The position numbers were made by a program, and so were the translations under genes. Below, one piece after another: positions 1-21,440 of a stretch of 32,000 nucleotides of DNA. The DNA is from Zygophlyctis sp. KS116 (taxonomy: Eukaryota; Fungi; Chytridiomycota), in assembly GCA_054661495.1 (NCBI GenBank), contig BAAFSQ010000098.1, positions 1,405 through 33,404 on the forward strand, in the 5' to 3' direction. How positions within the stretch are numbered: position 1 is the stretch's first letter; every line of letters begins with the position of its first letter. Under the pieces are notes generated by a model that was not told the DNA's origin, made no database searches, and worked only from the letters and a program-made list of their open reading frames with translations.

Positions 1-2922
1 GCTGGGACTGCAGAGTTTTTAGTAGATCAACAAAATCGATACTATTTCATAGAAATCAATCCCAGAATTCAGGTTGAACATACAGTCACGGAAGAAGTTA
101 CTGGTATTGATATCGTGTCTGCACAGATACAAATAGCCATGGGAGCTTCTCTAAAAGATTTGGGATTAATACAAGAAAATATATCGATTAGAGGATATAC
201 AATTCAATGTAGAGTTACCACAGAAGACCCATACAAGAATTTTCAACCAGATACTGGACGCATTGAGGTATATCGATCTTGTGCGGGTCATGGTGTTAGA
301 CTGGATGGTGGTCCTGGATTTTCTGGGGCGATCATATCTCCTCACTATGACTCACTGCTTGTAAAGTGTACAGTTAGTGGTCGTAGTTTCGACTTGACTC
401 GAAGAAAAATGCTACGGGCACTATCAGAATTCAGAGGTAAGTCATTGATTGGTTTAATGTTAGTGCGGGGTCTAAAAACTAATATCCCTTTTCTAATAGG
501 CTTATTACGACATCCGATCTTCCTTGAAGGCGGGAAGGTTTGGACTACATTTATTGATGATACTCCTGAACTGCTTCATGAATTCCCCTCCAAAAACAGA
601 GGGCAGAAAATTCTTCGATATTTGGGAGATCTTGCCGTTAATGGACCAAGAGTGAAGGGTCAAAAGGTATTTATGACATTATAAAATATACTAGGGACTT
701 CCCCAACTTCAAGCATCTGCTATTATTCCCTCTATCCCCAATATACCTGATAGTATAAGTTCTCGACCATGTCAGACAGGTTGGCGTACCATTCTTCTTC
801 AAAAAGGACCGCAGGTATTAAATATCTAATATTTATCTGATAATTCAGGAATTCGCCAAAGCTATTCGAAATCACCCTACTGCACTAATAATGGATACAA
901 CATGGAGGGATGCGCATCAATCTCTGCTGGCAACAAGAGTTCGAACAATTGATATGGCAAATATAGCGACAACTACCTCGCATATTCTGAAGGATGCATT
1001 CGCGCTGGAATGCTGGGGTGGAGGTACGATGATATTTTTAAAAATGAAGCAACTTTTGATGTTTCAATGCGATTTTTATGGGAATGTCCATGGGAGAGAT
1101 TGAAAACTTTAAGAGATCTAGTTCCAAATATTCCTTTCAGCATGCTTCTTCGGGGAGCAAATGCTGTCGGGTACTTGCTTTATTAGGGATTAATGAAATA
1201 GCTATACATCATATCCCGATAATGTGGTCTATGAATTTTGTAAGAAGGCGGTTGCTTGTGGAGTTGATGTATTTCGGGTTTTTGACTCATTGAATTATGA
1301 TGAAAATCTGATCCTTGGTATAGATGCGGTTGTCAAGGCTGGCGGTGTAGCAGAGGGGACCATATCTTACACTGGTGATGTCTCTGATCCTGCAAGAAAG
1401 AGATATGATATTAGCTATTATCTAAATTTAACCGATAAATTAGTCAAAGCAGGTATTCATATTCTTGGAATTAAGGATATGGCTGGATTATTGAAGCCTC
1501 AAGCAGCAAAAATTTTAATTTCTACTATAAGAAAGCGATATCCTGATTTGGTAATTCACGTCCATACTCATGATACTGCTGGAACAGGTGTGGCGAGCAT
1601 GCTTGCAGCTGTTAAAGCAGGTGCTGATGTTGTAGATCTAGCCATCGACTCAATGTCAGGATTAACATCACAACCTTCGTTGGGTGCATTTGTCGCTGGA
1701 TTACAAGGGACCGATTTGGATACGAAACTTGATATGGATCAATTACAGGTTTTGAATAGCTATTGGGAACAAATGAGACTTTTGTATTCGTGCTTTGATC
1801 CTGGAATTAAATCTGGTGACTCTGGAGTATATGTCCACGAGATGCCTGGCGGACAATATACAAATCTACTGTTCCAGAGTCAATCTTTAGGTCTGGGCTC
1901 AAGGTGGATTGGTACGTTTCATCGTATATATAACTTTCAGAAGTTAAAAATGCTTACGCAGCTGCTAACAAAATATGCGGGGATATTGTGAAAGTCACTC
2001 CATCTTCCAAAGTCGTAGGTGATCTTGCTCAATTTATGGTGGCTCAAAAATTAACGGAAGAAGATGTTTACGCACATGCAGAGAACCTATCATTTCCAAA
2101 TTCTGTTTTAGAATACTTTCAAGGGTATCTGGGTCAACCTCCGTACGGCTTTCCTGAACCGCTTCGAACTCGAATCCTCCAATCTAAAAAGCTTAGTAAA
2201 ATTGTTGGTAATTATAATTGATCCCACTAAAAATAGGACGCCCTGGTGCTACTATGGACCCTCTTGATATGGGTAGCTTGAGAATAAGTCTTCAGGAAAA
2301 ATATGAGAAGTTTTCAATCAGTGAATATGATGTTCTTAGTGCTGCTCTTTATCCTAAAGTAATATTTTTTTATTAAAAGACAGGTTTTCGAAGATTATCG
2401 GAAATTCAAGGACCAGTACGGCAATTTAAGCTCCTTGCCAACATTGCAATTCCTGAAACCTTTAAAGGTTGGCGAAGAATTTTGCTTTGAACTGGAAGCT
2501 GGAAAAACTCTCATCATTAGCTTAATTGCAATTGGTCCGCTTAATGAACAAACCGGTCACAGAGATGTATTTTTTAACTTGAATGGCGAAGCTCGAGTCG
2601 TGTCGATAATTGATGAAGTAGAGAAACAAACTAATGATAATTCCGCTTCAGCAGCCAGAACAAAGGTTAATCCTGAGGACAAATCTGAAATCGGTGTAAT
2701 TTTCCTTGTTTTTTATTGTAGGCCCCAATGTCAGGAATAATTGTTGACTTAAGAGCCAAGGAAGGTTCTCCAGTAAAAATTGGTGATCCTATTGCTGTAA
2801 TGTCTGCCATGAAGATGGAAACCGTCATTAATTCGACCTGTGATGGGATAATTGAGAAAGTATACGTCAAAGCCGATGAATCGCTCAATGCAGGAGATAT
2901 GATTGCTAAAATAAAAACGTAG
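1..2922 (+). CDS. PYC: Pyruvate carboxylase (5' part outside window; 9 micro-introns resolved)
   Basis: Biotin carboxylase motifs ([30 protein letters not shown]), carboxyltransferase motifs ([49 protein letters not shown]) and biotinyl domain SAMKM. ORF fragments join via GT-AG introns, e.g. 437-463 and 667-694. Confidence 0.97.
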
Positions 2923-2950
2923 CGGATCTAAAAAAATATGTTTTAGTACT

Positions 2951-4940
2951 TTAAGTTAATGTTGTTTCGCTTTCTGATCTCTGAGCTACACATTTAGAGG
3001 CTGATTCATGAGGATTCAAAGCACTGAATTCGTTTATCAAGTCTAGCATTGCATTTTTTTGATATGATGAGTCCATAGTAAGGCTGCCAAGACTTTTAAA
3101 CATATCTTGCGATAGCTGCGCACTAGCAATAGTTTCTTGAAATTGTTTCAGGTACCAAGTCCGCATTATGTATTTAGTTTTTGCGGCAAGCTTTTTCTTG
3201 ATGGATACCTTCGATATTGTATCAGCACTTTCTTCATCAGAGCTATAAGCCGCATCCTCAATATCTTGATCCATATCTTCAATCTGCTTACCCGTGGAAT
3301 TCAAGAAAATCTTTAAATATATCTCGAATCCAGCAAATGAATTAGCAAATGCTAAATATTCATTCGGAGCTTGAAGATCTCCAACTCTGAAGATATTCAG
3401 TATAGAATCAATCGCCAGTAGTTCAGAGTTTTCGTCACCTTGAATCACATACAAATATTGAAGTAAAGCCATAACAACATTATTGTCAGTCAATTTCTTT
3501 GTAATATACCAATCTCTAAAAGACATGCAGTTTCTTACAAATACACAAGCCTCCTTTTGAAGATCTTGATCTGAATGATCATCTAAAATCTTAATAATTT
3601 GATTAACCAATGGTGTTTCAATTATCACCTTGGCAAAGTGAATATGCGCAGACAAATTAGCCAAAATTTGTATGCAGAATATCTCCAGAGAGGCACGACA
3701 ACTGGAAGGTATTTTATGATATGTAAGAATTAGATCTATTTCAGAAAGTATGCCAGCCGAAACAATGTACTAAAGATTCATTTAAAATAAAAATACATCA
3801 AGATGAATTGGATTTTTGGAAGAAGACAAATTGATCATTGCTCTTAAAATAGGATGAGTCGTCATCATATTATTTCTCCTATTTTTGTAAATTAGAAAAA
3901 GTTACGATAATATTTGAACTAATCTGAAACACAGTTCAGGAGATATCATTGCGTCTATCAAATTATTACGTCCTGCCGCATGAAAAATCCTTGCTACTGC
4001 CCAACAGCATTCTTTCAGCAAAAGAGGATCATCGTGATTCAAGAAATTCGGAATTGCCTTAAGGGCAGGATCCATAAGATGCCAATCTGGTCTGTATCTA
4101 CACATATTGTCAACCACCCACATTGAAATTCTAAAAGCTTCCTTACGAGCACTTTCATCACTAAATTCTCCCTGCCATATTCGTAAAATAGCAGAAAGAG
4201 AACAGTTTTGCAATACGATATCTCGATAGCCTTCCCTGTCGCCTACAATATTACCAACAGTCCAGGCAGCCTCAAAATGAGTTACTCAAGATCATACCTG
4301 AGTTCTGATATTTCCAGAAGGATGAACAAGAAGATTGTTAAGAGATGCTAGAAAATCTGCTTTAACTATTGCCGTTGTGTGAGCAGTCGGGCCAGCTTTA
4401 AGTTAGATCAAACATTAATTACCAGCAATGTTTGTCACAATCCAGAGTGTCTCAAACTATGATTTTAGAATAAACTGATCCTTACAATCAAATTTTCTGG
4501 ATAACTAGCATTTAGAAACGAACGTAATTGACTGAGAATCTGCCACGTCAGCAAATGTTGGACATGAAGTTCGCTATTTTCTAACCATTAATATAAACCA
4601 ATAAGCAACCTCCACAAACATATTTTCTAATTTTCTTTATAGCCCAAAAGTTTTGCTCATGATTATTGACATATAGAGCCTGTACCCATTGACTCTCATC
4701 TATTCCCAGTCCCTAATTATTAAACCACGGTATCAATCAAACCTTTTCTTCCTGATGCTCTAATTTAATCGCTCTAGTTTTACTGATTAGAGGGGCGAGA
4801 GACTCATCTTCCTTTGAATCTGCTAAACGCCGGCGTGGTTTTATCTTTGAATCATCCAATCCGTCTTGAGAGAACTTGATCTCATTAATTTGGACACTGC
4901 TCAGGCATGATGGATCTGTCAAAAAACTAATCTCTTCCAT
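2951..4940 (-). CDS. Divergent importin-alpha-like ARM-repeat protein (multi-exon)
   Basis: Spliced translation gives FETLWIVTNIAAGPTAHTTAIV...RTQAAWTVGNIVGDREGYRDIV, WVVDNMCR, ECCWAVARI and LQKEACVFVRN, which resemble importin-alpha ARM repeats. Confidence 0.8.
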
Positions 4941-4955
4941 TTAAAGTCAAGTTAG

Positions 4956-4963
4956 TGACGTCA
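4956..4963. promoter_or_regulatory. CRE-like palindrome TGACGTCA just upstream of the importin-alpha-like start
   Basis: Perfect ATF/CREB-type site in a 37-bp intergenic gap. Related TTACGTCA lies at 5725-5732, upstream of the next gene. Confidence 0.4.
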
Positions 4964-4977
4964 AATCAATCAAAAAA

Positions 4978-5706
4978 TCACGTCTGCTTTTCAGTTTCGG
5001 ACACATTATTTAGCATTGAATGAATGGCTTCTGGTGATGGAGATTGCAAATTGTCCATCTTGCTCCAATCTATATTTGGAAATCCATTCTGCAAAGCCGA
5101 TAAAATACTAGGGGATTTAATAGAATCCGAATCAAACAGATATGAGAATGATTCTCGGTGATTATTTGGATTATCAATTGCAGGCTTTTCTGGAGTTATA
5201 CTTACATGCTGTTGAGCAGTAGTAGCAAGTGCAAGTAATTCTAGAGGTGATATGTTATATGGAGATTGGACAGATGATTCAGTAGGAGATGATTTTGGCG
5301 AGGTTTTAAGCTTACGAACCACTCTCTTCTTCTTAATGTTAGGAGGAGCTGGATTGCTCTTTCTATTCTTTAGTCTCTGCTGAAGAAGCATCATTGATTG
5401 CTTTTTTTGAAGACTTTCCAAATCTTGTTGACTTTGAATATCCGCTTGAGATGTTTGTCGGACTTGATGTTGACCTAATGTAGATAAAGCATTCATAGTC
5501 ATAATCTGAGCAAGTGCTACTACAAGATTCATATCTACTGAATTTGTAGGATATGAGGCTGGGAATGGCAACATTGGAAGTCCTTGAGGAGTTAACAATC
5601 CAGTCCAATCAGAAGCCGACTTTTCATTCGATGAAAGAATTGGTGAGACATATGGTCTTTTATCATTTGAAGGCTCTTGATCAATCCCCTTTTTAGCTTT
5701 TGGCAT
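4978..5706 (-). CDS. Hypothetical low-complexity S/P/Q-rich protein with a basic NLS-like patch
   Basis: 242-aa intronless ATG ORF filling the space between neighbours; KKKRVVRKLK patch; no family recognised. Confidence 0.6.
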   Translation of the reverse strand: MPKAKKGIDQEPSNDKRPYVSPILSSNEKSASDWTGLLTPQGLPMLPFPASYPTNSVDMNLVVALAQIMTMNALSTLGQHQVRQTSQADIQSQQDLESLQKKQSMMLLQQRLKNRKSNPAPPNIKKKRVVRKLKTSPKSSPTESSVQSPYNISPLELLALATTAQQHVSITPEKPAIDNPNNHRESFSYLFDSDSIKSPSILSALQNGFPNIDWSKMDNLQSPSPEAIHSMLNNVSETEKQT

Positions 5707-5753
5707 TTATAAATAAATCCGGGATTACGTCAACAATTGATCATTTTGAGTTT

Positions 5754-6693
5754 CTATTTCGGTAACAATACAATTTCATCCTTATTCATACGATCTAAAA
5801 TTGGTCTTTCCCATAAATTAACCGCAGTATTTGCAACAGCATCAGGATCAATATGTTTTGTAATATTTAATACTAAATCATCAAAGTCTTGCTGCACTGT
5901 AATCTTTAAAATTTTCCTTTTCACCGACAATAATAAAGAAAGTCCGACATATCCTAGAATCGCATCTTCTCCGGCAATCACAATATCCCAAATCCCTTCT
6001 AAAGTTCCATATGGAAGTACATTTGAAAAGAATGCAGCAAACCACCTATTGTTTAAAATTTAACATAATTCCATACCATGAACACTTTTGCAATTTAAAA
6101 CCTTCCAGATGTATATACATTACATAATCATGAACTTTTAAAAGTTCAGCCATGAAGTCTATTTTATTTGAAATAAAATAAGAATCTTGATCAACATCTA
6201 ATGGAACAGAGCATTGTTGTATAAACCCCCTAAATAGTATAAAAGCTTCGGTCATGCCTTGTATAGAAATATCCTGAAATGCTTTAGATAACGAAATCAG
6301 ATGATCTGGACACTTTTTCTGAATTTGATTAAGAAATTCAATTGGCGAGATCGTATCTAAAGATTGCACGCACAATAAAACCCCTCTGGTTAATAATTCA
6401 TCGTCTGAAATATCAGTTTCACAAATCCTTTTAATACAATTTAAAATCTGATGAATCTCATCATGTTGATTCTCCTGAGCAAATTCCCACATTTTCTTAA
6501 GCGTCGGCCAACATTTTAACAAAACTTTCCAAACCAATGGTCTATAAGAATGAGGAATCCGAACCCATAAACATAATTTCTGAAATTTAGAGATATTCAA
6601 CGGCTCTTCATTTAATGCAATCGTAAGAGAAGATTGTACTTCGACCGATTTAACCCCCAAAGTAGAATAATAATTCTTTCTAAAATTATCCAT
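5754..6693 (-). CDS. TBC1D7: TBC1 domain family member 7 (TSC complex subunit) homolog
   Basis: MDNFRKNYYSTLGVKSVE...IPHSYRPLVWKVLL matches the TBC1D7 N-terminus as I recall it (NFRSVYYEKVG...SMYRALVWKVLL). One 31-nt intron near 6046-6076. The start may extend to the in-frame ATG at 6828. Confidence 0.85.
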
Positions 6694-6864
6694 TACTATA
6701 CAATTTCTTGATCTTTGTTGAACCGTCGAACCGTTACCACTTACACCCTCAGAGCAATGTCTTTCAATAGTGTTTGATTGTACAAGATACAGAAGCGTAT
6801 CCAATGATTCATTTAATAAACTCATCATCTAATAGTATTAAATATAATTTCTTAGAAAATGCAT

Positions 6865-7305
6865 TTATTTCTTTAGATTTGGTGTCCATGATTCAGGAGT
6901 GAAATCAGTCTTTGGTAATGCAGAATGTTTCTTGTCCAATTCCAACTTTTTGACATTTTCCTGAATTCGCTGATATGCTTCTTGAGCCATTATCAATTCC
7001 TAACGTTAATACAATCATAATACTTGTTGAGTCGGAGGTTCAGATCGGGTATGACTTAACCAAGATCGCCATTGAACAGGCAAATCGGTTTCTGAATACT
7101 CAAATGCCTTTTTGTTACCGTCGACGTATTCAACCTTTCGCTTATAATAACTGCCGACCAGATCTAACATTAAACACATGTAAGTATTACCTTTAGACTC
7201 AAAATAACAATTTCCTTGAAGATCAGATCCGATATACTTGTAGTCTGAAGGGATCCAATTCTTCTTCTTAAGAAAGATTAATCCGCTGTTCAAAAGTCTA
7301 AACAT
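6865..7305 (-). CDS. NDUFA12-family protein (NDUFAF2/mimitin-like complex I assembly factor)
   Basis: IGSDLQGNCYFE...RKVEY...LPVQWRSWLSHTRSEPPT and C-terminal FTPESWTP; introns at 7164-7190 and near 7000-7023. Confidence 0.85.
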
Positions 7306-7362
7306 TCACAACAGAAGTACTTGTGGCCGTAAAAACTTCCGGAAAGGTTCCGAATAGATAGG

Positions 7363-9697
7363 ATGGATGATCAGTTGGCTAAAAAAAAGTAATTAATAAT
7401 ACATTAATAATTATAGGAAAATCATTCCTGGAGATGTAGTATTGCATCCATCGGATTCAGCAATCATTATCAATTATACAATGCGCATGTATAATTCACA
7501 AAATGATTTAGATCAAGAGTCGAATCATCAGAAAATGTAATTACAAACTATTAATGGAAAGAATTAGAATCAAGATTTCTCAAAAATCAAATATTAAACA
7601 ATTGGCGTCTGAAATTGTTGAAAAATGTAAATTACTAGGCGCAAATCGGACTTTAAAAGTACAAGAATTGTTACAATGTCTATTAAAGCGTAAGATGGAA
7701 CCAGGTTATGAGTCAAGGCAATCATTAAATAAGGATGAGAACTCAGATTATTTAATCGGAGCAAGGGAGGCTGTTGATTTTATAGTGCCACCAAGTATGG
7801 ATTTTATTGAGGAATATATTGAAAGTCTTTATGAAGGAATTAAAGAAAAGTTGATTGCTACAAGAAAGATTTTATATTTGGCAAAAATTCCAGAGAATAT
7901 GGAAACTTTATTGAAAAATGGTAATTTGTAAACTTAATCAATTTAGAGTCATTAATGTCGGCATTAACAAGAGTGTTACGTGAAGATACAAAGAGAAGTT
8001 TAGAGTTGATTACAAACATTATCTTTATTTTTTTCTGTTTTTCAACTTTTTCAGATTTTCATTCACTAATCACTGCAAATAAATTGGGGGATATGTGTTT
8101 GAAAATTATTGATCAAGAAAAGATGCGATGGAGTTTATGGAAAGATGATTTTGAAAAAAGTATGTCTGGAAAAGGATCAAGTCAAGATTTAGATATAAAC
8201 CAAGCAAAATTTAAGAGTCGATTGAAACGACAAGATCAGCTTTTGTTTTGTAAATTTAAAGTTCCATTAATACTAGTGACATTTAATTTGCTCTTAAATT
8301 TGGCAGAAGATTTGACGCTTGAAGTTAAAATGATTAAAAGAGGAATCATTCCGAGTTTGATGATGATGCTGGATCGCCCTTCTTCGGAATTACTTTTATG
8401 CGTAGTTACATTTTTAAAGAAATTAAGTGTTTTTGAAGAAAACAAGAATGAAATGCTAAAGGTATTTCAAACGCAAGAATTAATAATTAGGATGAAACGT
8501 TTATTGAGCGTTTAATTTCTCTTGTTCCAAGTGACAATGATGATCTTCATGAACTTACTTTTAGGCTTATTTTAAATCTAAGCCATGATGTAAAAGTTCG
8601 GAGTCTTCTTGTCAAGAATTTATTTCTTGGGAAACTTCATGCATTTTTCGAGCATGATCCTCTTTCTGAAATTGTTCTATCTCTTTTATATCAAGTTAGC
8701 ATTGATGAAAAAAACAGAAATAACCTTGCGTTTCAAGAATGTATTCCTTCAGTAAGACTTTTAAATTGTAATGTAGTAGCTAGTAAATATTTTGCTAAAG
8801 ACAGAATTTAATCCTGTTCCGATTGCACATGTCGCACTGTTAATTAACTTGGCTTCGATTCCTACAAATGTAAAACTCATTTGTAAAGACAATCAATTAA
8901 AATACATTTGTAAAAGAGCTATTAAAACCAGTGATTACACTCTCTTAAAACTGCTAAGAGTCTTATCTATTCACGATGATATAAAAATGCAATTCTTGGT
9001 ATTATACTTTTTCTAACTCTAAGGATTATATTGATGACTTTTTAGCCATAATAACGAAAACCAAAAACACTCAAATGACTATCGAATGTCTTGGAATACT
9101 ATGTAACATTGGAACCATTCCAAACTTTGATTTTACAAAGTGTATCAAAAGCTATCAAATCATGCCATTCTTAATTTCCACATTGTCAAAATCAAGTGAA
9201 TCTACATCACTAAATGAAAATGATGATTTACTACTTGAAGTAATTGTATTGATTGGTAACATGTTGAATGATCCTAATGTTATTCCAATCCTACTAGACA
9301 GTGGAATCCCAAAACTCATTGTTAACTTGCTATTATGTAAATTATTAAAATTATAATCAAAATAGCCAAAGAGGAAGATGATGAAATAATTCTTCAACTT
9401 TTATATTGCATCAATAGACTCTTGTATAATGAAATCTGCAGAGAAATATTATTATCTAGCACAGGTAATTTATTAAATTCTTAAAACTAGACTTGATTAC
9501 TTATTTAATTGATCTCCATAATGATGAATGCTCCCCAATCAGATCCCTTTCAGAAAATTGCCTAGATCTTATAATGGTAAAACTTAAAAATCTAACCAAA
9601 GGACTCTTCCCCCCAAAACACACTACTAATCAGACAAATGAAATTCCAAAATCACAATCTAAAATGGCTTGAAGCAGTTTCTAACATTGAGGTTTAA
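7363..9697 (+). CDS. KAP3: Kinesin-associated protein 3 (kinesin-II accessory subunit, intraflagellar transport)
   Basis: Spliced N-terminus KRKIIPGDVVLHPSDSAIIINY...QKIIRIK...LASEIVEKCKL; YIESLYE; ALTRVLRED; LLLNLAED; FLKKLSVFEENK; KEEDDEIILQ; C-terminal KFQNHNLKWLEAV. Many micro-introns. Confidence 0.93.
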
Positions 9698-10136
9698 TTG
9701 GAACAAAACTTAATTGTGAAGCGATTGGCAATTTAATTTTTCCAATTTCCTCAATAGTCTTCCAATTAGAATCATTAATTTCTGATCTTGGTATAAAATA
9801 AACCTCTTCTGACCAAGGCTGCGATACACTTACTAATAAAGATTGATTACAATTTAAGAATGTTAAAATTGGAAAATGCTGAAAGAGAGTCGACGGTTCA
9901 GAATTCTTATTAATAATCACAATTCCATGCATTGATCTAGACTGCAACAGATCAGTAACACTTGATAGTCCCTTGATAGTACTAGATCTTACTAGATCTG
10001 ATAAGACTGACAATACCGATGCATCATTGATAATAGTCCAATCATATTTGTAGGGATGATGTAATGAAAACTTCATTCTAAAGTAAAATTTGTAAGCACT
10101 TGGAATCTCTATTTTACATATGCTTGATGCATTCAT
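9681..10136 (-). CDS. Hypothetical protein
   Basis: 151-aa ATG ORF with globular-looking composition; 3' end overlaps the KAP3 stop; no family recognised. Confidence 0.5.
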   Translation of the reverse strand: MNASSICKIEIPSAYKFYFRMKFSLHHPYKYDWTIINDASVLSVLSDLVRSSTIKGLSSVTDLLQSRSMHGIVIINKNSEPSTLFQHFPILTFLNCNQSLLVSVSQPWSEEVYFIPRSEINDSNWKTIEEIGKIKLPIASQLSFVPIKPQC

Positions 10137-10240: not shown

Positions 10241-10903
10241 TTATGAGCTCCTGATTGCCCTAAAAGGTTCTTTCTTTAACTGAGATTGATTTGGGATGTT
10301 GGCATTTGTACTTGTCCTCATTGATTCTGCTGATGTTTTATTCTTGATATTGCTGTGTGTATTTGCAATATTGCGCTGAGACTTTACGACTGGTTTTGAT
10401 ACTTGCTGTGGAGCTTTATCAGCCACTCTAGCCTTTTTATTTGATGCTTGCTGTGGAGCTTTATCAGCCACTCTAGCCTTTTTATTTGATACTTGAGTTA
10501 TTTCTGGCGGTGCAGCTTCTTTTTTAGAGACTGGTCTAGATGCTACTGGAGGAGATGGAGGAACCACAGCTGCTTCTGTTTGAATTTTATTTGCTGGAAG
10601 AGCATTCAGAGATCCAGTATTTCCAAAAGGCAGACTTGACTTTTGATTGCTGTCTGGGTTTCCTGTTGGACTTTGACTGAAAACTGGCTGATCCTTCCCA
10701 TTAATAAGATCATTAAAATCCTTTCTTAAATCATGGAGTATATCAATTGGATCAAGAGATTTAATGTTTATAAGTGCCACATATTTTTCTGATGGAGGCC
10801 ATGATCCATAAGAAGACCATTTAGAGACTTTAATAAGTTTTTGTTGAGCAAAGACAGTTAGCAATTGATTTAATAAAAGAATGAAAAGTCTGATGCTCTT
10901 CAT
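10241..10903 (-). CDS. Putative secreted protein with a P/K/Q-rich repetitive tail
   Basis: Signal-peptide-like MKSIRLFILLLNQLLTVFA and an internal 15-aa repeat. Confidence 0.55.
   Translation of the reverse strand: MKSIRLFILLLNQLLTVFAQQKLIKVSKWSSYGSWPPSEKYVALINIKSLDPIDILHDLRKDFNDLINGKDQPVFSQSPTGNPDSNQKSSLPFGNTGSLNALPANKIQTEAAVVPPSPPVASRPVSKKEAAPPEITQVSNKKARVADKAPQQASNKKARVADKAPQQVSKPVVKSQRNIANTHSNIKNKTSAESMRTSTNANIPNQSQLKKEPFRAIRSS
10396..10495. repeat. 45-bp coding tandem repeat, about 2.2 copies
   Basis: ttgat(a/g)cttgctgtggagctttatcagccactctagcctttttat at 10396 and 10441, partial at 10486; encodes SNKKARVADKAPQQ(A/V). Confidence 0.95.
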
Positions 10904-13509: not shown

Positions 13510-16500
13510 TTAATCTTTCAGTTTAAGAAAGTTCATTTTGGCAGCAAGTAATGTAGAAATCTCAGCCTCGAAACCTTTTATCTAGTGATATGAACCAAAG
13601 CTTCAATAATTACCTTTGTTTCATTAGCTTCCCTTATTTTCAGAGGTGTCTTCTCATAACCTTCAGATTCCTTTTTCTTCACTAATGTATCGAGATTTGA
13701 TTGAATACTTTCAATTTTGTTGTCAATTTTCTTAACTTCTTCATCAAAGTTGATCATCCCTCGGACAAGCAAATAAACATTACAGTCTTCTGAAATATTA
13801 TACGGTGCGCAGCCATCTGGGGCCGAGGCGCCCTTCTTAACAGCATAAACATTATCACACCCCTTAATCATGGATGTAATAACCGACAAGTGTGATCCAA
13901 CCAAGCTAATAAAATGATCATTTATCGAATCAACATATACTATATTTCATTAGAATATAACTTAAAATACCTGTTGCTCCTTTCTTAATACCATAATCTG
14001 AAATTAGAGATCGTGAGGCGTGGATCACTTTATTGAGCATTTCAAATTGCTCTACGGCTCCTGTATTGTTCCATTCAATATTCTTTTCCATATTAATAGA
14101 AAAAAATTACCTCCATTGGGAAATCTGAGATCATGATAGATTCGCCTCGAAAAGTAGAATCAGGGTGTCTTGGTAATCTTTGATATAATTCTTCCGTAAC
14201 AAAAGGCATAAATGGATGCATAAGTTTCAGGCCATATTCAAGGCATGTATAAAGAGTTTCTTGAGTAGCAGCCTTAGCTCTTAAGTCATCGCCGTCCAAG
14301 ATGGGTTTACATATTTCCTAGGAAAATTAAAAGAAAAGATTGAATACCACATAAACATCACATAGATCATAGAGCCAGAATTGATGAATGGCAGAGGTGG
14401 CTTGCATAAAATTCATCTGTTCCAAATTCGAGTCAATATCTTTTATGGTAGAATTAAGTTTATGCAATATCCACAAATCCATTATTGATTCTCTTCCCGA
14501 AAACTAAACATTTGAGCCAAATTTAAATATCTTACTTCAAAGGATTTTTTAGGCTTATAATCGTCCCCTAGTTTCAATAAAGCAAACCGCGTAGCATTCC
14601 AAAGTTTGTTGCAGAACTTTCGGTAGCCATCAACGCGCAGAATGTCCAAATTAATGTCCCTTCCTGACGACGTATATGCTAGCAAGGTGAACCTAAGAGC
14701 GTCTGCACCACATTCAGGAATTCCATTTGGAAAATCCTGTTTTTGTCCTTGTTGAGCCTTTTTAACCTCACGAGGATCAAGATTTCCAATTAGCAGTCGC
14801 GCTTGCAATTCTTCCAGACTTATTCCACTAATTACATCTAATGGATCTATGACATTTCCAAGAGATTTAGACATTTTCCTTCCATGAGCATCTCGAACCA
14901 TGGCGTGGCAAAATACATTTGAAAAAGGTATCTTTCCGGTCAATTTAAGTCCTAACATGACCATGCGAGCTACCCAAAAGAATAAAATATCCCAACCAGT
15001 CTCCAAAAGGGTATTGGGATAGAAATGATCAAAATCTGGTGTCTTTTCAGGCCATCCCATAATTGAAAAAGGCCACAAGCCTGAAGAAAACCAGGTGTCT
15101 AAAACATCTTCGTCTTGATGGAGAGTTATGCTACTTTTACCCACCCCAGGAAACCTCTTGAGTGCTTTATCTAAGGCCTCGCTTTCTGATCTACCTGAAA
15201 CCCAACAACTCTCATCATCTCTTGAATTAGAAAGGCCTGAAACTTCAACAAAGTATGCGGGAATTCGATGTCCCCACCACAATTGGCGTGAAATGCACCA
15301 GTCTTGAATATTTTCAAGCCATCTAAACCATTCATTTTCTGAAGTCTGTGGAGAGATTTTCAATTCACCTGAACGAACGGCCTCCATTGCGGGGATTGCC
15401 AAGTTGGAACAGTCTACCCACCATTGAGGCTTCATCAAAGGTTCAACTATATTTCCTGATCTTCCACATATAGGGATTACCATCTTATTATCTTCAGTCT
15501 TAATATAAAGACCTTTTTCTTTTAGTGCTTCTAAAATCGCAACACGAGCATCAAAGCGCTGCAACCCCTTAAAAGAGCCTCCATTTTCATTTATCTTTCC
15601 TTCATCAGTGAAAATATTAATAAACTCCAACTTATTTCTCTGTCCAACTTTGTAATCATTAAAATCATGAGCAGGTGTAATTTTGACAGCACCACTTCCA
15701 AATTCAGGATCTGGATATTCATCAGCAATAATGGGTACTCTTCTTTCCAAGAAAGGATGAATAGCCAATTTACCATGTAGATGCTATAAATTAAAAAACT
15801 TTTAAATCCATACCTTGTATCTATTATCTGACGGATGAACGGCAATAGCTGTATCCCCCAACATAGTCTCTAAACGAGTCGTAGCAACAATAATTCTTTC
15901 ATCTAAAATAAATCTACTAATATGTATACCTGAATTTTCAATTTCATAGGCAAATGAAATCAAAACTCCAAACTCATATTTTTTCTTTGGATCATGATCT
16001 GGTACTGCCATTAATGTTCTACCTTCCAACTCCTTATTTTCAACTTCCAAATTAGACAGCGCAGTTTTTAACTTGGTGCACCAATTAACCAATCTATTCG
16101 CCCTATAAATAACTTTTTCCTCGTGAAGACGAACAAAAGCCTCTGTTACAGCTTTACTTAGAGATGGATCCATTGTAAACTTTGCTCTTGACCAATCTGT
16201 GGAAGATCCTAATTTTTTCAATTGATTATAAATCCTTTCAACATAACTAAAATTAAAAGGATAAAAAATTACATATCTTTCCAGTCCATAACTTCATGAA
16301 TAAATGCTGATCGACCTAGTTCATGCCTTGTGATCCCTTTTTCCTTCATAAGCTTTTTTTCAACAACAACTTGTGTAGCTATACCTGCATGATCGCATCC
16401 AGGATTATACAAGACAGTTTTTCCCTTCATTCTATTCCATCTAATAAGACAATCCTGAATAGAATTAGTCAATGCATGACCTAGATGTAGAGAACCGGTT

Positions 16501-16850
16501 ACATTTGGCGGAGGAATAGGAATCACAAAAGTTCCTTTTTCACTTGGTTTCCCATTTGGCAACCAAGGCTCAAAATAAGCCTCCTTTTCCCACCATGAAT
16601 ACCATGATGATTCAACTTGCCTCGGTTTATAACCAGTAGCCATTACATCGGACAAATCCTTTTTGTTTCCGGGAACTGTCCGATCGACCCATTCTTCCTC
16701 TTTTGGTTGCGAACTGACCGACTCTTCCTTTTTAACAGACTTTTGACCGATTTTAGCCTTTTCTTCTGCCAACTTTGCCATCTTTGCCAAATACTTTTTA
16801 TTCTTGGCTTCATTCTTTAGAGAATTCTTTGATTTGGCAGCTTCACTCAT
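13510..16850 (-). CDS. VAS1: Valyl-tRNA synthetase
   Basis: [13 protein letters not shown] (HIGH-like), [40 protein letters not shown]; multiple micro-introns. Confidence 0.98.
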
Positions 16851-17058
16851 TGATCTCTTTAAACACTGGCCTAGTATTTTTTTCACCTTGTGCCTCAGTA
16901 GGGAATGTAAATTTGACAATGATTCTATTAAAAAATATCTACTTGGTATCTAAATTTAATCTACAAACTACTTCTAATTGACGGTCTTGGAGGCGCAGAA
17001 ACAAGATCTGATAGATCCAAGTGCTCAGCATGGCGTTAAAATCTATTTTTAGAATGGG

Positions 17059-17068
17059 CTATAAATAG
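17059..17068 (+). promoter_or_regulatory. TATA box (ctataaatag) upstream of the secreted LRR gene; duplicated at 20076-20085
   Basis: TATAAATA about 40 bp upstream of ATG 17102. Confidence 0.55.
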
Positions 17069-17101
17069 GTGGTTGCCGTAAAAGAAGGCATTTAAAAAAG
17101 T

Positions 17102-17501
17102 ATGCTATCAATTACATTCAAAAACACTATCTTACTCATGACAGTTGCTCTCTCTGCATTGATCACTAACGTTGATGCAGTGGCCAACTGTAACACTGCG
17201 TCGAACCAATGCTGTTGGGTACGTCAAGTTCGGACAGAACTGGGAGGGAATGAAAACAGTATTGCCAAATTCAATTGTTGTGGTAAAAAGGGAGTTCGTT
17301 GCGGCTCAGGAAATGTCACAGAACTAGACTGGAGAAGTCATGGACTTGATCCCACAAAAATTCCTACTCAAAGAGCGTTACTGAATTTGCCCGGACTTAA
17401 AGAAATGTAATATTTACTTTTAATTAATCATCAGAAAACTTGGAGCGATTTGCACAGATCAGAGTCTTCCTGGTGGAAGAAGTTGGTTATACTGCTCTTG
17501 A
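17102..17501 (+). CDS. Small secreted cysteine-rich protein with plant-type LRR N-cap and one LRR (copy 1, ~123 aa)
   Basis: Signal peptide, then CC...CCGKKGVRC...VTELDW...IP...LLNLPGLKEIKL, resembling LRRNT_2 plus a first LRR. A 28-nt intron (17407-17434) extends the ORF to TGA at 17499-17501. Confidence 0.75.
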
Positions 17502-17634
17502 GCACTGCATCATATGTCGCTAAACCAAAAAATGTTAACGAATGAAGCACCAACAATTGTACTTTTAGTGCTGTATTCAAAATAAGAAATGGTTTATGAC
17601 AAAAACTGAGTCTTTATTATTCACAATGAGCTAA

Positions 17635-17767
17635 TCATCTACTCAAATCATTCATTTTCCGATTTAATTTGCTGATTCTATCCCTATTTTCATCAGCACG
17701 ATCTTGTACTCTGTCCAATTGATGTCGTTGATTTTCTAATTCGTTATTCATTGATGCTCCCATCATT
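17635..17767 (-). pseudogene. Truncated Sec9 3' fragment (last 43 codons), fused in frame to insert sequence
   Basis: Identical to 20652-20784. Confidence 0.9.
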
Positions 17768-19782
17768 TTTACACAAGCATAGTTTTTCTCTACAAGTCTA
17801 TAAGAGGGTGTCAAGTGTGAAATATTTTCCGACATACCAAAGCAGATTACTCTGGTAAATCATCTTTTACCAGAGATTCCGCAGAACTTGGATCAGATTT
17901 CAAGAAGAGCCTCAGAGCCTCTCTTCGTCAACTAAAAATTTAAACATTCTAATCTGTCCATTGCCAAACAATCAATGCTTCTAATCATAAGTGTGAAACA
18001 TGAATTTCACTAGCGGCAGCTAAATCGAATCATAGTCTTTTCATGAATCCTGAAGCTCTGAATTTATCATCACAAATTAAATATAGCTTTCTTATCGAAG
18101 CAGTTTGACGTTAATTTATGGCAGCCAAATAGCATGCTGAAGGTAACCAAAAAATTTCTTTCTTGAAACAAAATGCCAAAGCGATTCCTCAATGTCGAAT
18201 ACTCTGGAAGTAAAACCAGTATATATGTCACTGACTTTGAAGACCTGAGTGAAGTACAGATAGCTGTCAAGGAAGCATTTTCTATTGATGTCGGTTTTGG
18301 TCTTATTCGACTCTACGACCTCCAAGGCCAGCTCATCACAGACTTGGACGACATCCCCAAAGACTATTACAAGAAGCTGAAGGATGGCGGTCTCTTTCTT
18401 GCTGTTCATTGTCCAAAACAAGAAACTGTGTCTGGTTCTTGTCCACCTAAACGAGCAAGGTCGGCTAGTAGTCTCGCAAGCAGAGCCAGCAATTGCACAG
18501 AATTGAATCAGGATTCTTTCATAGACAGAATTTTGGATAGAGATACCAATGGATGTGTTTTGACAGGAAAAGATGAACTGGATTGCCAGGCCTGTCATAT
18601 TGTTCCTTGGGTTTACTTTCAAAAATATGATTTGGTGGGGCAAGAAATCTGGAACAGTCTATTTCCTTTCAGTTGCTTCAACCCGGTTCATCAAGTGATG
18701 GATGTACGTAATGGTATATTGATGTGGGGCCCCCTTAATGCTCAGTTTGACAAATTCGCTTTTACTATCATTAAAAAGGGCAGTGTTTACGAAGTTGAAG
18801 CTCTTCATGAAGATGAAATGGAAACTCCAAAAAAAATCACGGCTAAGAAGATTCAAATTACGGTGGCTAAATTGGATGGGAAGCAGTTCAAGTTTGATGA
18901 TGACAAAAAGGATATCTGGCCAGGGGAGAAATTTCTTCAACTGCACAACCGAATCTTCCACAAAAAACGAGAAGCGAATAGACTTAGCGCTTCGGCGGAA
19001 GTTAAAGAAATGACGGAGGAGGATTCAGCTCAAACAATAACTGATGAACGAGAAGAGAGTATCATAAAGGTCAAAAATTGGGATGCTCTGTATAGTGCAC
19101 AAACTCATTATGTCAATAATACCTAGATTTACCGTATTATTTTTGACAGATTATCCAAAATATCCGCTTAACGATACAAAGAGATGTGTCATTCAATTGG
19201 ATTGTTTTTGTGAGTCTGGCACTGAGAGCTGCCTTTAATATTAGGCAATTAGATCCTGATAAGATTCTAAAAGCTAAAATCAGATTCTAATTAGATACTA
19301 AATGCCAAACGTTTTTGTTGAGAATAGAGAATCAAACGTCTCCGTGCTGATCAGGTTTTGTAGCGTAAGTGATAGATTCTGTCAGTTTATATTTTTAGAT
19401 GATTGATCGCAAAATATATATTAGTAATGTTAAATTCGGTGAGAAAAAAAGTACTATTGATATTATTTCATGTTTTGGCTCATGGAATTAAATGACTAGA
19501 CTGGCTCGGCATATCTTGATTGGAAAGGTAACACTAAAAGCCCAGAAAAGTGCCCGCAAACCATTGCCACAATAATCCGCTATCTTGAGACGATCACAAT
19601 TAATTTTAGTGTTACGGTGACTGGATCACAGAATTGAAAGAGGGGAACGAAGATAATTAACTTGGCGCAAATGATTTCCTTGAATGGAAGTTCTCATAAA
19701 CCCAACAACTTGACGGAGAAAGCACCCCACAATTGTGCTTTTAGTACAGAATTCAAAATAAAAATGGTTTATGACAAAAACC
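17768..19782 (+). mobile_element. 2015-bp inserted cassette carrying an HNH nuclease gene, between 1-kb direct repeats
   Basis: Unique sequence bounded exactly by the two repeat copies. No transposase, RT or clear TIR seen, so mobility is inferred. Confidence 0.6.
18173..19126 (+). CDS. Crinkler-like protein: ubiquitin-like header domain plus HNH_2-type endonuclease
   Basis: Intronless, 317 aa. Residues ~1-80 form a header (MPKRFLNVEY...IRLYDLQGQLITDLDDIP...GGLFLAVH). The nuclease pattern RDTNGCVLTG...ACHIVP...VRNGILM...NAQFDKFAFTI...WPGEKFLQLH is typical of fungal HNH_2 proteins. Confidence 0.85.
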   Translation: MPKRFLNVEYSGSKTSIYVTDFEDLSEVQIAVKEAFSIDVGFGLIRLYDLQGQLITDLDDIPKDYYKKLKDGGLFLAVHCPKQETVSGSCPPKRARSASSLASRASNCTELNQDSFIDRILDRDTNGCVLTGKDELDCQACHIVPWVYFQKYDLVGQEIWNSLFPFSCFNPVHQVMDVRNGILMWGPLNAQFDKFAFTIIKKGSVYEVEALHEDEMETPKKITAKKIQITVAKLDGKQFKFDDDKKDIWPGEKFLQLHNRIFHKKREANRLSASAEVKEMTEEDSAQTITDEREESIIKVKNWDALYSAQTHYVNNT

Positions 19783-19867
19783 CTGCCATCTTTGCCATCT
19801 TTGCCAAATACTTTTTATTCTTGGCTTCATTCTTTAGAGAATTCTTTGATTTGGCAGCTTCACTCAT
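19769..19867 (-). pseudogene. Truncated ValRS 5' fragment running into the insert
   Basis: [28 protein letters not shown] then GFLS-stop inside the insert end. Confidence 0.85.
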
Positions 19868-20784
19868 TGATCTCTTTAAACACTGGCCTAGTATTTTTTT
19901 CACCTTGTGCCTCAGTAGGGAATGTAAATTTGACAATGATTCTATTAAAAAATATCTACTTGGTATCTAAATTTAATCTACAAACTACTTCTAATTGACG
20001 GTCTTGGAGGCGCAGAAACAAGATCTGATAGATCCAAGTGCTCAGCATGGCGTTAAAATCTATTTTTAGAATGGGCTATAAATAGGTGGTTGCCGTAAAA
20101 GAAGGCATTTAAAAAAGTATGCTATCAATTACATTCAAAAACACTATCTTACTCATGACAGTTGCTCTCTCTGCATTGATCACTAACGTTGATGCAGTGG
20201 CCAACTGTAACACTGCGTCGAACCAATGCTGTTGGGTACGTCAAGTTCGGACAGAACTGGGAGGGAATGAAAACAGTATTGCCAAATTCAATTGTTGTGG
20301 TAAAAAGGGAGTTCGTTGCGGCTCAGGAAATGTCACAGAACTAGACTGGAGAAGTCATGGACTTGATCCCACAAAAATTCCTACTCAAAGAGCGTTACTG
20401 AATTTGCCCGGACTTAAAGAAATGTAATATTTACTTTTAATTAATCATCAGAAAACTTGGAGCGATTTGCACAGATCAGAGTCTTCCTGGTGGAAGAAGT
20501 TGGTTATACTGCTCTTGAGCACTGCATCATATGTCGCTAAACCAAAAAATGTTAACGAATGAAGCACCAACAATTGTACTTTTAGTGCTGTATTCAAAAT
20601 AAGAAATGGTTTATGACAAAAACTGAGTCTTTATTATTCACAATGAGCTAATCATCTACTCAAATCATTCATTTTCCGATTTAATTTGCTGATTCTATCC
20701 CTATTTTCATCAGCACGATCTTGTACTCTGTCCAATTGATGTCGTTGATTTTCTAATTCGTTATTCATTGATGCTCCCATCATT
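19783..20784 (+). repeat. 1002-bp direct repeat, copy 2
   Basis: Matches 16766-17767. Confidence 0.97.
20119..20518 (+). CDS. Small secreted cysteine-rich LRR-cap protein (copy 2, identical)
   Basis: Identical to 17102-17501. Confidence 0.75.
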
Positions 20785-21440
20785 CTCAGTCTCCCAAGAC
20801 CAGCAGAGATTTGATTTAGATTAGAATCTATTCCTTCTTCTACAGAATCCCTTTCTAGTCCATCTGGAGTTGAATGAATATGACTAACTCTTCCTCCAAC
20901 AGATGATCCTCTAGAAGAAATAGCTGGAGCAGATGAAGAATTATTAGCTCTAGGATCTACTCTTTTTCTATTTTCTTTCTCAGTCTTTGATTCTCTTTCT
21001 GCAGCCTTTTTTTCTAAAGCTTCCTGTTTCTTTTTAGAGGATTTACTTCCAATTGCAGGTAAAAAGAACCAACCATTTAATGCCTTTAATCTAGTAGTTT
21101 TCGTTTCAGATATTTTAGCATGCTGATCAGCTTCATCTAATCTTTTATCAACTTTTTCCAATTGTTCACTCTGTAGAGCCAATTTTGATAAATTAGAAGT
21201 TGCAATTTCAGATGCAATCGTTAATTTTCCCAATGCTCTTGAAGAGGCATCCAATGAATCATTTTGAATTTGTCTAGTATGACTTGTATAATCATTTGAA
21301 CCATAATTAAAGCCATTGCCTTTGATTTCTTCTTCAGCTCTTGCCCATTTATTATCATCAGATCCTTGTTCTCTTTCTCTTGGTTCTCTTGATGATGATC
21401 CTCTAGATGATCCCTTTGAGGGGTTGTTGTTATAAGACAT
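20652..21440 (-). CDS. SEC9: Sec9/SNAP-25 family Qbc-SNARE
   Basis: Two SNARE motifs (SLDASSRAL...LALQSEQLEKVDKRLD and IDSNLNQISAGLGRLRMMG...ELENQRHQLDRV). Confidence 0.92.
   Translation of the reverse strand: MSYNNNPSKGSSRGSSSREPREREQGSDDNKWARAEEEIKGNGFNYGSNDYTSHTRQIQNDSLDASSRALGKLTIASEIATSNLSKLALQSEQLEKVDKRLDEADQHAKISETKTTRLKALNGWFFLPAIGSKSSKKKQEALEKKAAERESKTEKENRKRVDPRANNSSSAPAISSRGSSVGGRVSHIHSTPDGLERDSVEEGIDSNLNQISAGLGRLRMMGASMNNELENQRHQLDRVQDRADENRDRISKLNRKMNDLSR

What the first reader, a model, noticed from the sequence alone, without database searches (positions are those of the whole stretch)
16766..20784. HNH-nuclease cassette inserted with a ~1-kb target-site-like duplication
Seen: the structure is A-insert-A, where A is 1002 bp (one mismatch, at the junction) and the insert is 2015 bp with a single HNH gene. 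A begins inside the ValRS CDS and ends inside the Sec9 CDS, so both essential genes keep one intact copy, and removing the insert plus one A restores a normal locus. Known: ordinary transposon TSDs are a few to tens of bp, and Crinkler-type nuclease effectors have been linked to transposon origins. Inference: this is a very recent event. It may be a nuclease-driven mobile element that integrates through widely staggered nicks or a circular intermediate without a transposase, or a repair-mediated capture. Recombination between the repeats could excise a 3017-bp circle or amplify the unit.
Basis: partly seen in the sequence, partly recalled or inferred. Interest (0 to 1): 0.9.

Follow-up and report, generated by a model that had tools for sequence, protein, structure and literature searches.

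The report
Effector gene inserted with host duplication
In a freshwater chytrid fungus, a probably borrowed nuclease-effector gene sits between two identical 1-kb copies of the neighbouring host DNA, a layout that recurs with unrelated cargo genes in this genome and looks like copy-in DNA repair that spares tightly packed essential genes, not like a new transposon.

Summary
The A-insert-A structure is real: 1002-bp repeats, one mismatch, 2015-bp insert. Each junction recurs in contigs from other studies carrying different alleles, so the junctions are not assembly errors, although no contig spans the whole unit. 'Very recent' and 'HNH-driven mobile element' are not supported. The insert differs between strains as much as the flank does (0.5-1.2%). 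It is a mosaic of decayed (77-84%) host fragments, including a relic of IMPACT and an 83% copy of this locus's own Sec9 3' region. It has no TIRs, shared ends, poly(A) or transposase. I verified the same host-sparing layout at two other contigs (341-bp and 212-bp perfect cores). At one the repeat ends in a decayed tail, so perfect repeats are homogenised and do not date an event. This scan noted about ten more on other DNA of this genome, with varied cargo (not checked). The Crinkler-type gene (ubiquitin-like header plus HNH_2) is 86% identical in DNA to a Globomyces gene (dS 0.34), while housekeeping genes are saturated, so transfer between chytrids is likely. Best reading: repair-type templated insertion that re-copies the target, filtered by selection in a gene-dense genome.

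The parts
14482..16850 (-). Valyl-tRNA synthetase, intact copy (5' and middle exons; the gene continues left)
   Evidence: Pfam tRNA-synt_1; N-terminus 80% identical to a relative's ValRS
16766..17767 (.). Repeat copy A1 (ValRS 5' end, spacer with secreted gene, Sec9 3' end)
17102..17410 (+). Small secreted Cys-rich protein resembling an LRR N-terminal cap, copy 1; absent between Sec9 and ValRS in relatives; highly variable between strains; possible 28-nt intron at 17407-17434
17521..17606 (.). 'T' segment, just downstream of the Sec9 stop (probable Sec9 3' UTR), copy 1
   Evidence: found only at this locus
17635..17767 (-). Promoterless Sec9 3' stub in A1
17768..19782 (.). Insert X: mosaic cassette without terminal repeats
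17796..18067 (-). Decayed relic (79-84%, about 290 bp deleted inside) of the 5' CDS and promoter of the IMPACT/YIH1 gene on contig C198
18173..19126 (+). Intronless Crinkler-type gene: ubiquitin-like header (aa 1-79, DNA to about 18401) plus HNH_2 nuclease (18554-18769, H-N-N variant); probable horizontal acquisition
19179..19389 (.). Short decayed pieces shared with the C67 cassette (19179-19278, 77%) and with C131/C166 (19316-19389, 80%; at C131 next to an RVT_2 remnant)
19697..19781 (.). T': old (83%) copy of T; begins next to where a Sec9 stop would lie
19769..19867 (-). Truncated ValRS start (32 codons) running from A2 across junction 2
19783..20784 (.). Repeat copy A2
20119..20427 (+). 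Small secreted LRR-cap gene, copy 2
20538..20623 (.). T segment, copy 2
20652..21440 (-). Sec9/SNAP25 t-SNARE, intact copy

Best explanation
A chromosomal L-A-X-A-R allele made by repair-type templated insertion. DNA synthesis left the chromosome at one end of A, copied a foreign or ectopic string (IMPACT relic, Crinkler-HNH gene, other scraps, a local copy of the Sec9 3' region) and returned about 1 kb upstream, re-copying A. No dedicated element ends or transposase are involved. The HNH gene is cargo, probably acquired from another chytrid lineage. In a genome where Sec9 and ValRS are ancestrally 35-70 bp apart, insertions whose duplication spans both gene ends leave both genes whole, so these survive selection. 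The event is older than the strain split. The two A copies are kept alike by recombination, while the unpaired relics decay. Shown: layout, junction recurrence, mosaic relics, lack of shared ends, recurrence at other loci, low dS to Globomyces. Inferred: template switching, homogenisation at this locus, selection filter, direction and timing of transfer.
For: Junctions in independent runs with other alleles. Insert divergence between strains (0.5-1.2%) matches the flank (0.5%), making 1 or fewer differences between A copies unlikely without homogenisation (P 0.03 to 0.003). Relics at 77-84% identity, JC 0.19-0.27. No TIRs or shared ends. Same layout at C312 (341-bp core spanning the diphthamide synthase 3' end and the V-ATPase D 3' end; HNH cargo) and C67 (212-bp perfect core plus decayed tail, spanning a nucleotide-sugar transporter 3' end and an EF-hand gene start; non-HNH cargo). 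Relatives have Sec9 next to ValRS with no cassette. Bulk metagenome X2: insert depth about equal to or above the flank, A-containing contig 1.8x, against 1.6x expected for two copies. The same geometry is defined as a 'cycle of templated insertion' (PMC7025897).
Against: No donor locus with the whole insert was found, so junction microhomology cannot be measured. No read or contig spans the full unit. The product cannot be told from circle pop-in by sequence alone. T' may point to a two-step history. In X1 the contig holding A and the insert's right end has depth 623, against about 315 expected; this is unexplained. Only two sister cases were verified by me.
Confidence: 0.55

Rival explanations
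1. Circle pop-in: a circle carrying A plus X formed first by end joining and then entered the chromosome by a single crossover in A (Campbell-type). It may still pop out.
For: Gives exactly this product. Proposed for Arabidopsis transposed genes with flanking repeats (PMC2869330). The insert contigs in X3 are at about half the flank depth (57-104 vs 118), which would fit an empty allele.
Against: The circle needs the same two non-homologous joins, so it explains less. Relics at the two insert ends come from different loci, not from one permuted donor repeat. Contig depth is not copy number.
Confidence: 0.15
2. Two local steps. First a tandem duplication, or a merger with a diverged haplotype in which the HNH cassette already lay behind Sec9, created junction 2 and T'. 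Then a one-sided invasion copied A back and end-joined it at junction 1.
For: T' exists only at this locus and begins where a Sec9 stop would lie; the relative's sequence after the stop aligns in register with it, though weakly and in AT-rich DNA.
Against: No haplotype with Sec9-T'-X was found. The Sec9 C-terminus in A shows no sign of a pseudogene period (70% aa to a relative, like the rest of the gene). It does not explain the sister loci.
Confidence: 0.12
3. Not tandem: A plus X is an ectopic copy or a free circle that a short-read assembler threaded into the locus as a loop.
For: No contig spans the unit. The Crinkler header is a high-copy repeat that could close a loop (contig depths 2,357-15,792 in X1). 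Excess depth on the A contig.
Against: An independent ENA contig joins header, HNH and right arm, 1565 bp at 100%. Junction 1 has the same depth as the flank in X1 (204 vs 197). C67's repeats differ by an indel and a decayed tail. The breakpoints fall so that both host genes stay whole in tandem, which is what selection on a chromosomal allele predicts.
Confidence: 0.11
4. One reading: a transposase-free element whose HNH nuclease makes widely staggered nicks, so that A is a giant target-site duplication.
For: The HNH gene is intact and under purifying selection (dN 0.075, dS 0.34). Two of the verified cases carry HNH_2 genes. Crinkler nucleases are linked to mobile DNA (PMC5289972).
Against: No conserved ends or second full copy. 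Repeat length varies (212, 341, 1002 bp). Four of six well-flanked HNH loci lack repeats. HNH relatives in three other chytrid contigs lack them (one has a short flank). The same layout occurs without HNH (C67).
Confidence: 0.07

Closest known systems
Cycles of templated insertions (PCAWG; PMC7025897)
   Same: A string of segments copied from distinct loci is inserted and returns to the host chromosome upstream, re-replicating a host segment (A-X-A).
   Different: Described as somatic events in cancer. Here it is a heritable allele shared by strains of a free-living fungus, carries a whole, probably foreign, effector gene, and is old enough to have decayed.
Arabidopsis transposed genes with flanking repeats (Woodhouse et al. 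2010; PMC2869330)
   Same: Non-transposon genes (F-box, LRR, defensin) flanked by direct repeats of mostly genic DNA that is present once at the orthologous empty site.
   Different: Repeats there were mostly sought at 15-400 bp and often also found at the donor. Here the repeat is 1 kb, spans two essential gene ends, and no donor repeat was found.
Crinkler (CR) effectors with Ubl header and HNH nuclease (Zhang et al. 2016 as reviewed in PMC5289972; AeCRN13/BdCRN13)
   Same: Ubiquitin-like header fused to a swappable C-terminal domain; HNH here, a P-loop-motif domain in the C332 paralogue.
   Different: No Pfam Crinkler (PF20147) hit; H-N-N variant; secretion and activity untested; host unknown.
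Transposons with target-site duplications (DDE elements, non-LTR retroelements, Starships, Helitrons)
   Same: Insert flanked by a direct repeat of target DNA; cargo moved between lineages.
   Different: No transposase, recombinase or RT; no TIR, poly(A) or shared ends; repeat length varies from about 200 to 1000 bp in the verified cases.

Membership tests
Autonomous or non-autonomous transposon | Conserved termini (TIRs or shared ends) among copies | tested here: not met
   Six inserts: no TIR above shuffles, no shared ends; the right-end motif occurs only at this locus
Autonomous or non-autonomous transposon | Multiple dispersed full-length copies | tested here: not met
   Only partial matches of 60-245 bp elsewhere; the assembly is fragmented, so this is a lower bound
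Autonomous or non-autonomous transposon | Transposase, recombinase or RT gene in the element | tested here: not met
   Only ORF is Ubl header plus HNH_2
Non-LTR retrotransposition (retrocopy) | Poly(A) tail at the 3' junction | tested here: not met
   Junction 2 ends in T', no A-tail
Cycle of templated insertion | Inserted string returns to the host chromosome, re-replicating a host segment | tested here: met
   empty-site gene order in relatives
Cycle of templated insertion | Insert made of segments templated from distinct loci | tested here: met
   Relics of C198, C67, C131/C166 and the local T; decayed, so one event vs serial build-up is open
Cycle of templated insertion | All junctions phased on one molecule and of one age | tested here: inconclusive
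   Only short-read contigs; none spans the unit
Cycle of templated insertion | Microhomology to the donor at junctions | not testable with these tools
   Donor for the insert ends not found
Crinkler / CR effector | Ubiquitin-like header domain | tested here: met
   Model aa 1-79 has beta-grasp order; all top Foldseek rows are PB1/Ubl, best E 1.7e-3, probability 1.0
Crinkler / CR effector | Header reused with different C-terminal domains | tested here: met
   Header 60-76% aa identical at C332 and C702, homology ending at 18401
Crinkler / CR effector | Pfam Crinkler PF20147 match | tested here: not met
   weak hits to Batrachochytrium Crinkler proteins only
Crinkler / CR effector | Delivery into host cells and nuclease activity | not testable with these tools
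   Needs experiments

The most novel reading that the evidence does not exclude
This chytrid has a dedicated, end-less pathway that repeatedly installs accessory and horizontally acquired effector genes by copying them in with 0.1-4 kb target duplications, possibly started by breaks from its own Crinkler nucleases. The repeats then work as reversible, Campbell-like attachment arms for pop-out and re-entry.
Probability: 0.15. Interest if true: 0.88.

Novelty: new variant of a known kind. Interest (0 to 1): 0.6.

Why it matters
If the dozen or so A-X-A loci are confirmed, this genome shows how a compact eukaryote adds effector genes, including ones from other chytrids, without transposons and without breaking essential genes. 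A rearrangement class known mainly from tumours would be acting as a heritable route of gene gain. It also gives a testable landing mechanism for fungus-to-fungus gene transfer outside Starships, and warns that perfect flanking repeats do not date an insertion.

Tried and rejected
Assembly artefact of the junctions: rejected. T as a transposon end, attC-like site or ncRNA: no other copy in the genome, no Rfam hit, folding z only -0.5 to -2.1; the metagenome pattern scan gave only 20-23 bp chance matches in 43-46% GC contigs. C88's repeat is part of a tandem protease array, C354's are tandem paralogues, C633's repeat brackets a housekeeping RNA12/YME2 gene, and C166's looks like a paralogue pair: none counted as verified cases. 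Exact-protein look-ups of Sec9 and the secreted protein found nothing. The Zhang 2016 paper was not held.
Full report
Observation. The repeat is as described: 16766-17767 and 19783-20784, offset 3017, one mismatch (16772/19789). The insert holds one 317-aa ORF with HNH_2. A runs from inside ValRS across a spacer into the Sec9 3' end, so ValRS is whole on the left, Sec9 is whole on the right, and the spare copies are a 32-codon ValRS stub and a promoterless Sec9 stub. The genome is a 12.7-Mb assembly in 1175 contigs. Named relatives of the HNH protein come from Globomyces, Boothiomyces and Batrachochytrium, so the organism is inferred to be a chytrid. The runs that hold it are mostly freshwater or estuary samples.

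Is it real? I laid four runs on 14700-19900. In X1, probably the source, one contig bridges junction 1 at depth 204 (left flank 197), and one contig joins the insert's right arm to the start of A. X3, from another study and with other alleles, has both junctions and the A-to-Sec9 join; its junction 2 is one 9-bp unit shorter. X5 bridges junction 1 and then carries extra sequence after 17809. X2 shows a 1-bp variant at junction 2. An ENA metagenome contig matches 18155-19719 at 100%. So the junctions exist in nature. All four runs are short-read contigs and none spans the unit, so the tandem order is inferred. In bulk metagenome X2 the A-containing contig is at 9.5 against a flank of 5.3 (8.4 expected for two copies). 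In X1 that contig is at 623 against 315 expected. Depth rises steadily from left to right in that run, which uneven amplification could cause, but I could not resolve it; the tool warns that contig depth is not copy number.

Age. X3 differs from the window by 0.52% in the flank and 0.5-1.2% in the insert, so the insertion predates the split of these strains. At that divergence, at most one difference between A copies has probability 0.03-0.003, which implies homogenisation or assembler collapse. At C67 the repeat is a 212-bp perfect core followed by a 14-bp indel and a decayed tail. Collapse alone cannot produce that, so cores are kept alike while unpaired margins decay. 'Very recent' is therefore not supported.

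Anatomy of the insert. 17796-18067 is a decayed copy (79-84%) of the 5' CDS and promoter of IMPACT on C198. 18173-18401 encodes a header shared with Crinkler-like genes on C332 and C702, which continue into other domains; paralogous header contigs reach depths in the thousands. The model's first 79 residues form a beta-grasp, and all top PDB matches are PB1 or ubiquitin-like. The nuclease has N at the last HNH position, as several relatives do. Downstream are scraps shared with C67 (77%) and C131/C166 (80%). The last 85 bp (T') are an 83% copy of the segment behind the Sec9 stop, found nowhere else in the assembly. There are no TIRs, no ends shared with five other candidate inserts, no poly(A), and no second full copy.

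Empty site. In two related chytrids Sec9 is followed by ValRS after 35 and about 70 bp. The secreted LRR-cap gene inside A (a lead-level match) is therefore itself an earlier arrival in this slot.

Recurrence. Among loci fetched around Crinkler and HNH genes, C312 has a 341-bp perfect core around a 1.4-kb HNH_2 cassette, spanning the 3' ends of diphthamide synthase and V-ATPase D. C67 has the repeat described above around a 1.8-kb cassette without an HNH domain, spanning a sugar-transporter end and an EF-hand gene start. C214 has a 43-bp repeat around a trypsin gene. The C312 insert also carries 76-83% pieces of other contigs. Of six HNH_2 loci with long flanks, two have the layout and four do not. 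Forty kb of C1 has none. Earlier notes of this scan list further cases with repeats of about 100, 176, 197, 250, 281, 287, 390, 410, 599 and 4000 bp and cargo such as LRR, retropepsin and PD-(D/E)XK genes. These are unchecked leads; the 341-bp note matches my C312 case in size.

Horizontal origin. The HNH gene is 86% identical in DNA over 949 bp to a Globomyces pollinis-pini gene, with dS 0.34 and dN 0.075. DNA polymerase alpha on the same Globomyces contig matches this genome at only 65-67% in its best patches. Housekeeping genes of a closer relative already have dS above 1. Transfer between chytrid lineages, or from a shared donor, is the simplest reading. It rests on one control gene and no tree, and the direction is unknown. 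The relic distances (0.19-0.27) are of the same order, which would fit one period of acquisition; this is inference.

Mechanism. The geometry equals a 'cycle of templated insertion': a string of copied segments that returns to the host chromosome and re-replicates part of it (PMC7025897). Transposed Arabidopsis genes often carry similar flanking repeats that occur once at the orthologous empty site (PMC2869330). I favour replication-based repair with template switching and end joining (0.55). Circle pop-in (0.15) gives the same product. A two-step local history that explains T' (0.12), an ectopic or circular copy threaded in by the assembler (0.11) and an HNH-driven element (0.07) are the other rivals. 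The tendency of repeats to span two gene ends is best read as survival bias in a genome with tiny spacers (inference). Crossover between the A copies would release a 3017-bp circle and restore a single-A locus (follows from the layout; not observed). X3's lower insert depth is only a hint of an empty allele.

Verdict. Real, recurrent and not reported for chytrids in the papers searched, but a new variant of a known kind of rearrangement rather than a new mobile element. Interest 0.6. If a dedicated, reversible gene-installing pathway is shown (probability about 0.15), interest would be 0.88.

Handling notes. In one search I translated the secreted gene locally with a putative 28-nt intron removed; the joined model was not searched and is not given here.

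Noticed in passing
window 17102-17410: The secreted LRR-cap gene is far more variable between strains than its flank: A differs by 3.6% in X3 vs 0.5% for the flank; of ten codons changed by the listed SNPs, nine are non-synonymous (the SNP table was truncated). Suggests diversifying selection.
   Followed up: partly
L038:963 (window 20807): A 98.8%-identical strain contig breaks off inside Sec9, 23 bp from the A boundary, and continues into DNA with a TIP49/RVB1 fragment that has no DNA match in G000: a second rearrangement at this gene, or a chimera.
   Followed up: partly
window 17809: Run X5 has 330 or more bases of other sequence after 17809, inside the insert's left relic.
   Followed up: no
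window 18155-18401: Paralogous Crinkler header contigs reach depth 2,357-15,792 vs about 200 for single-copy DNA in X1, while the assembly shows only a few copies; a large collapsed family or amplification bias.
   Followed up: no
window 19119-19789 + 16773-17767: Contig depth 623 in X1, twice what two copies of A predict; unexplained.
   Followed up: partly
L054 (G000:C633) 553-685 and 3191-3323: 133-bp repeats made of an HNH gene's 3' end bracket a housekeeping RNA12/YME2 gene: the inverse layout.
   Followed up: partly
L004 (G000:C896) 31-226: Fragment of the HNH gene's 3' end (85-91%) next to a CobW gene at a contig end; possibly another landing site.
   Followed up: no
L045 (G000:C88) 1894-10000: An HNH_2 gene sits inside a tandem array of aspartic-protease-like genes (family recognised from motifs, not tested).
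   Followed up: no
window 10395-10484: Two near-perfect 45-bp tandem units inside a minus-strand ORF.
   Followed up: no
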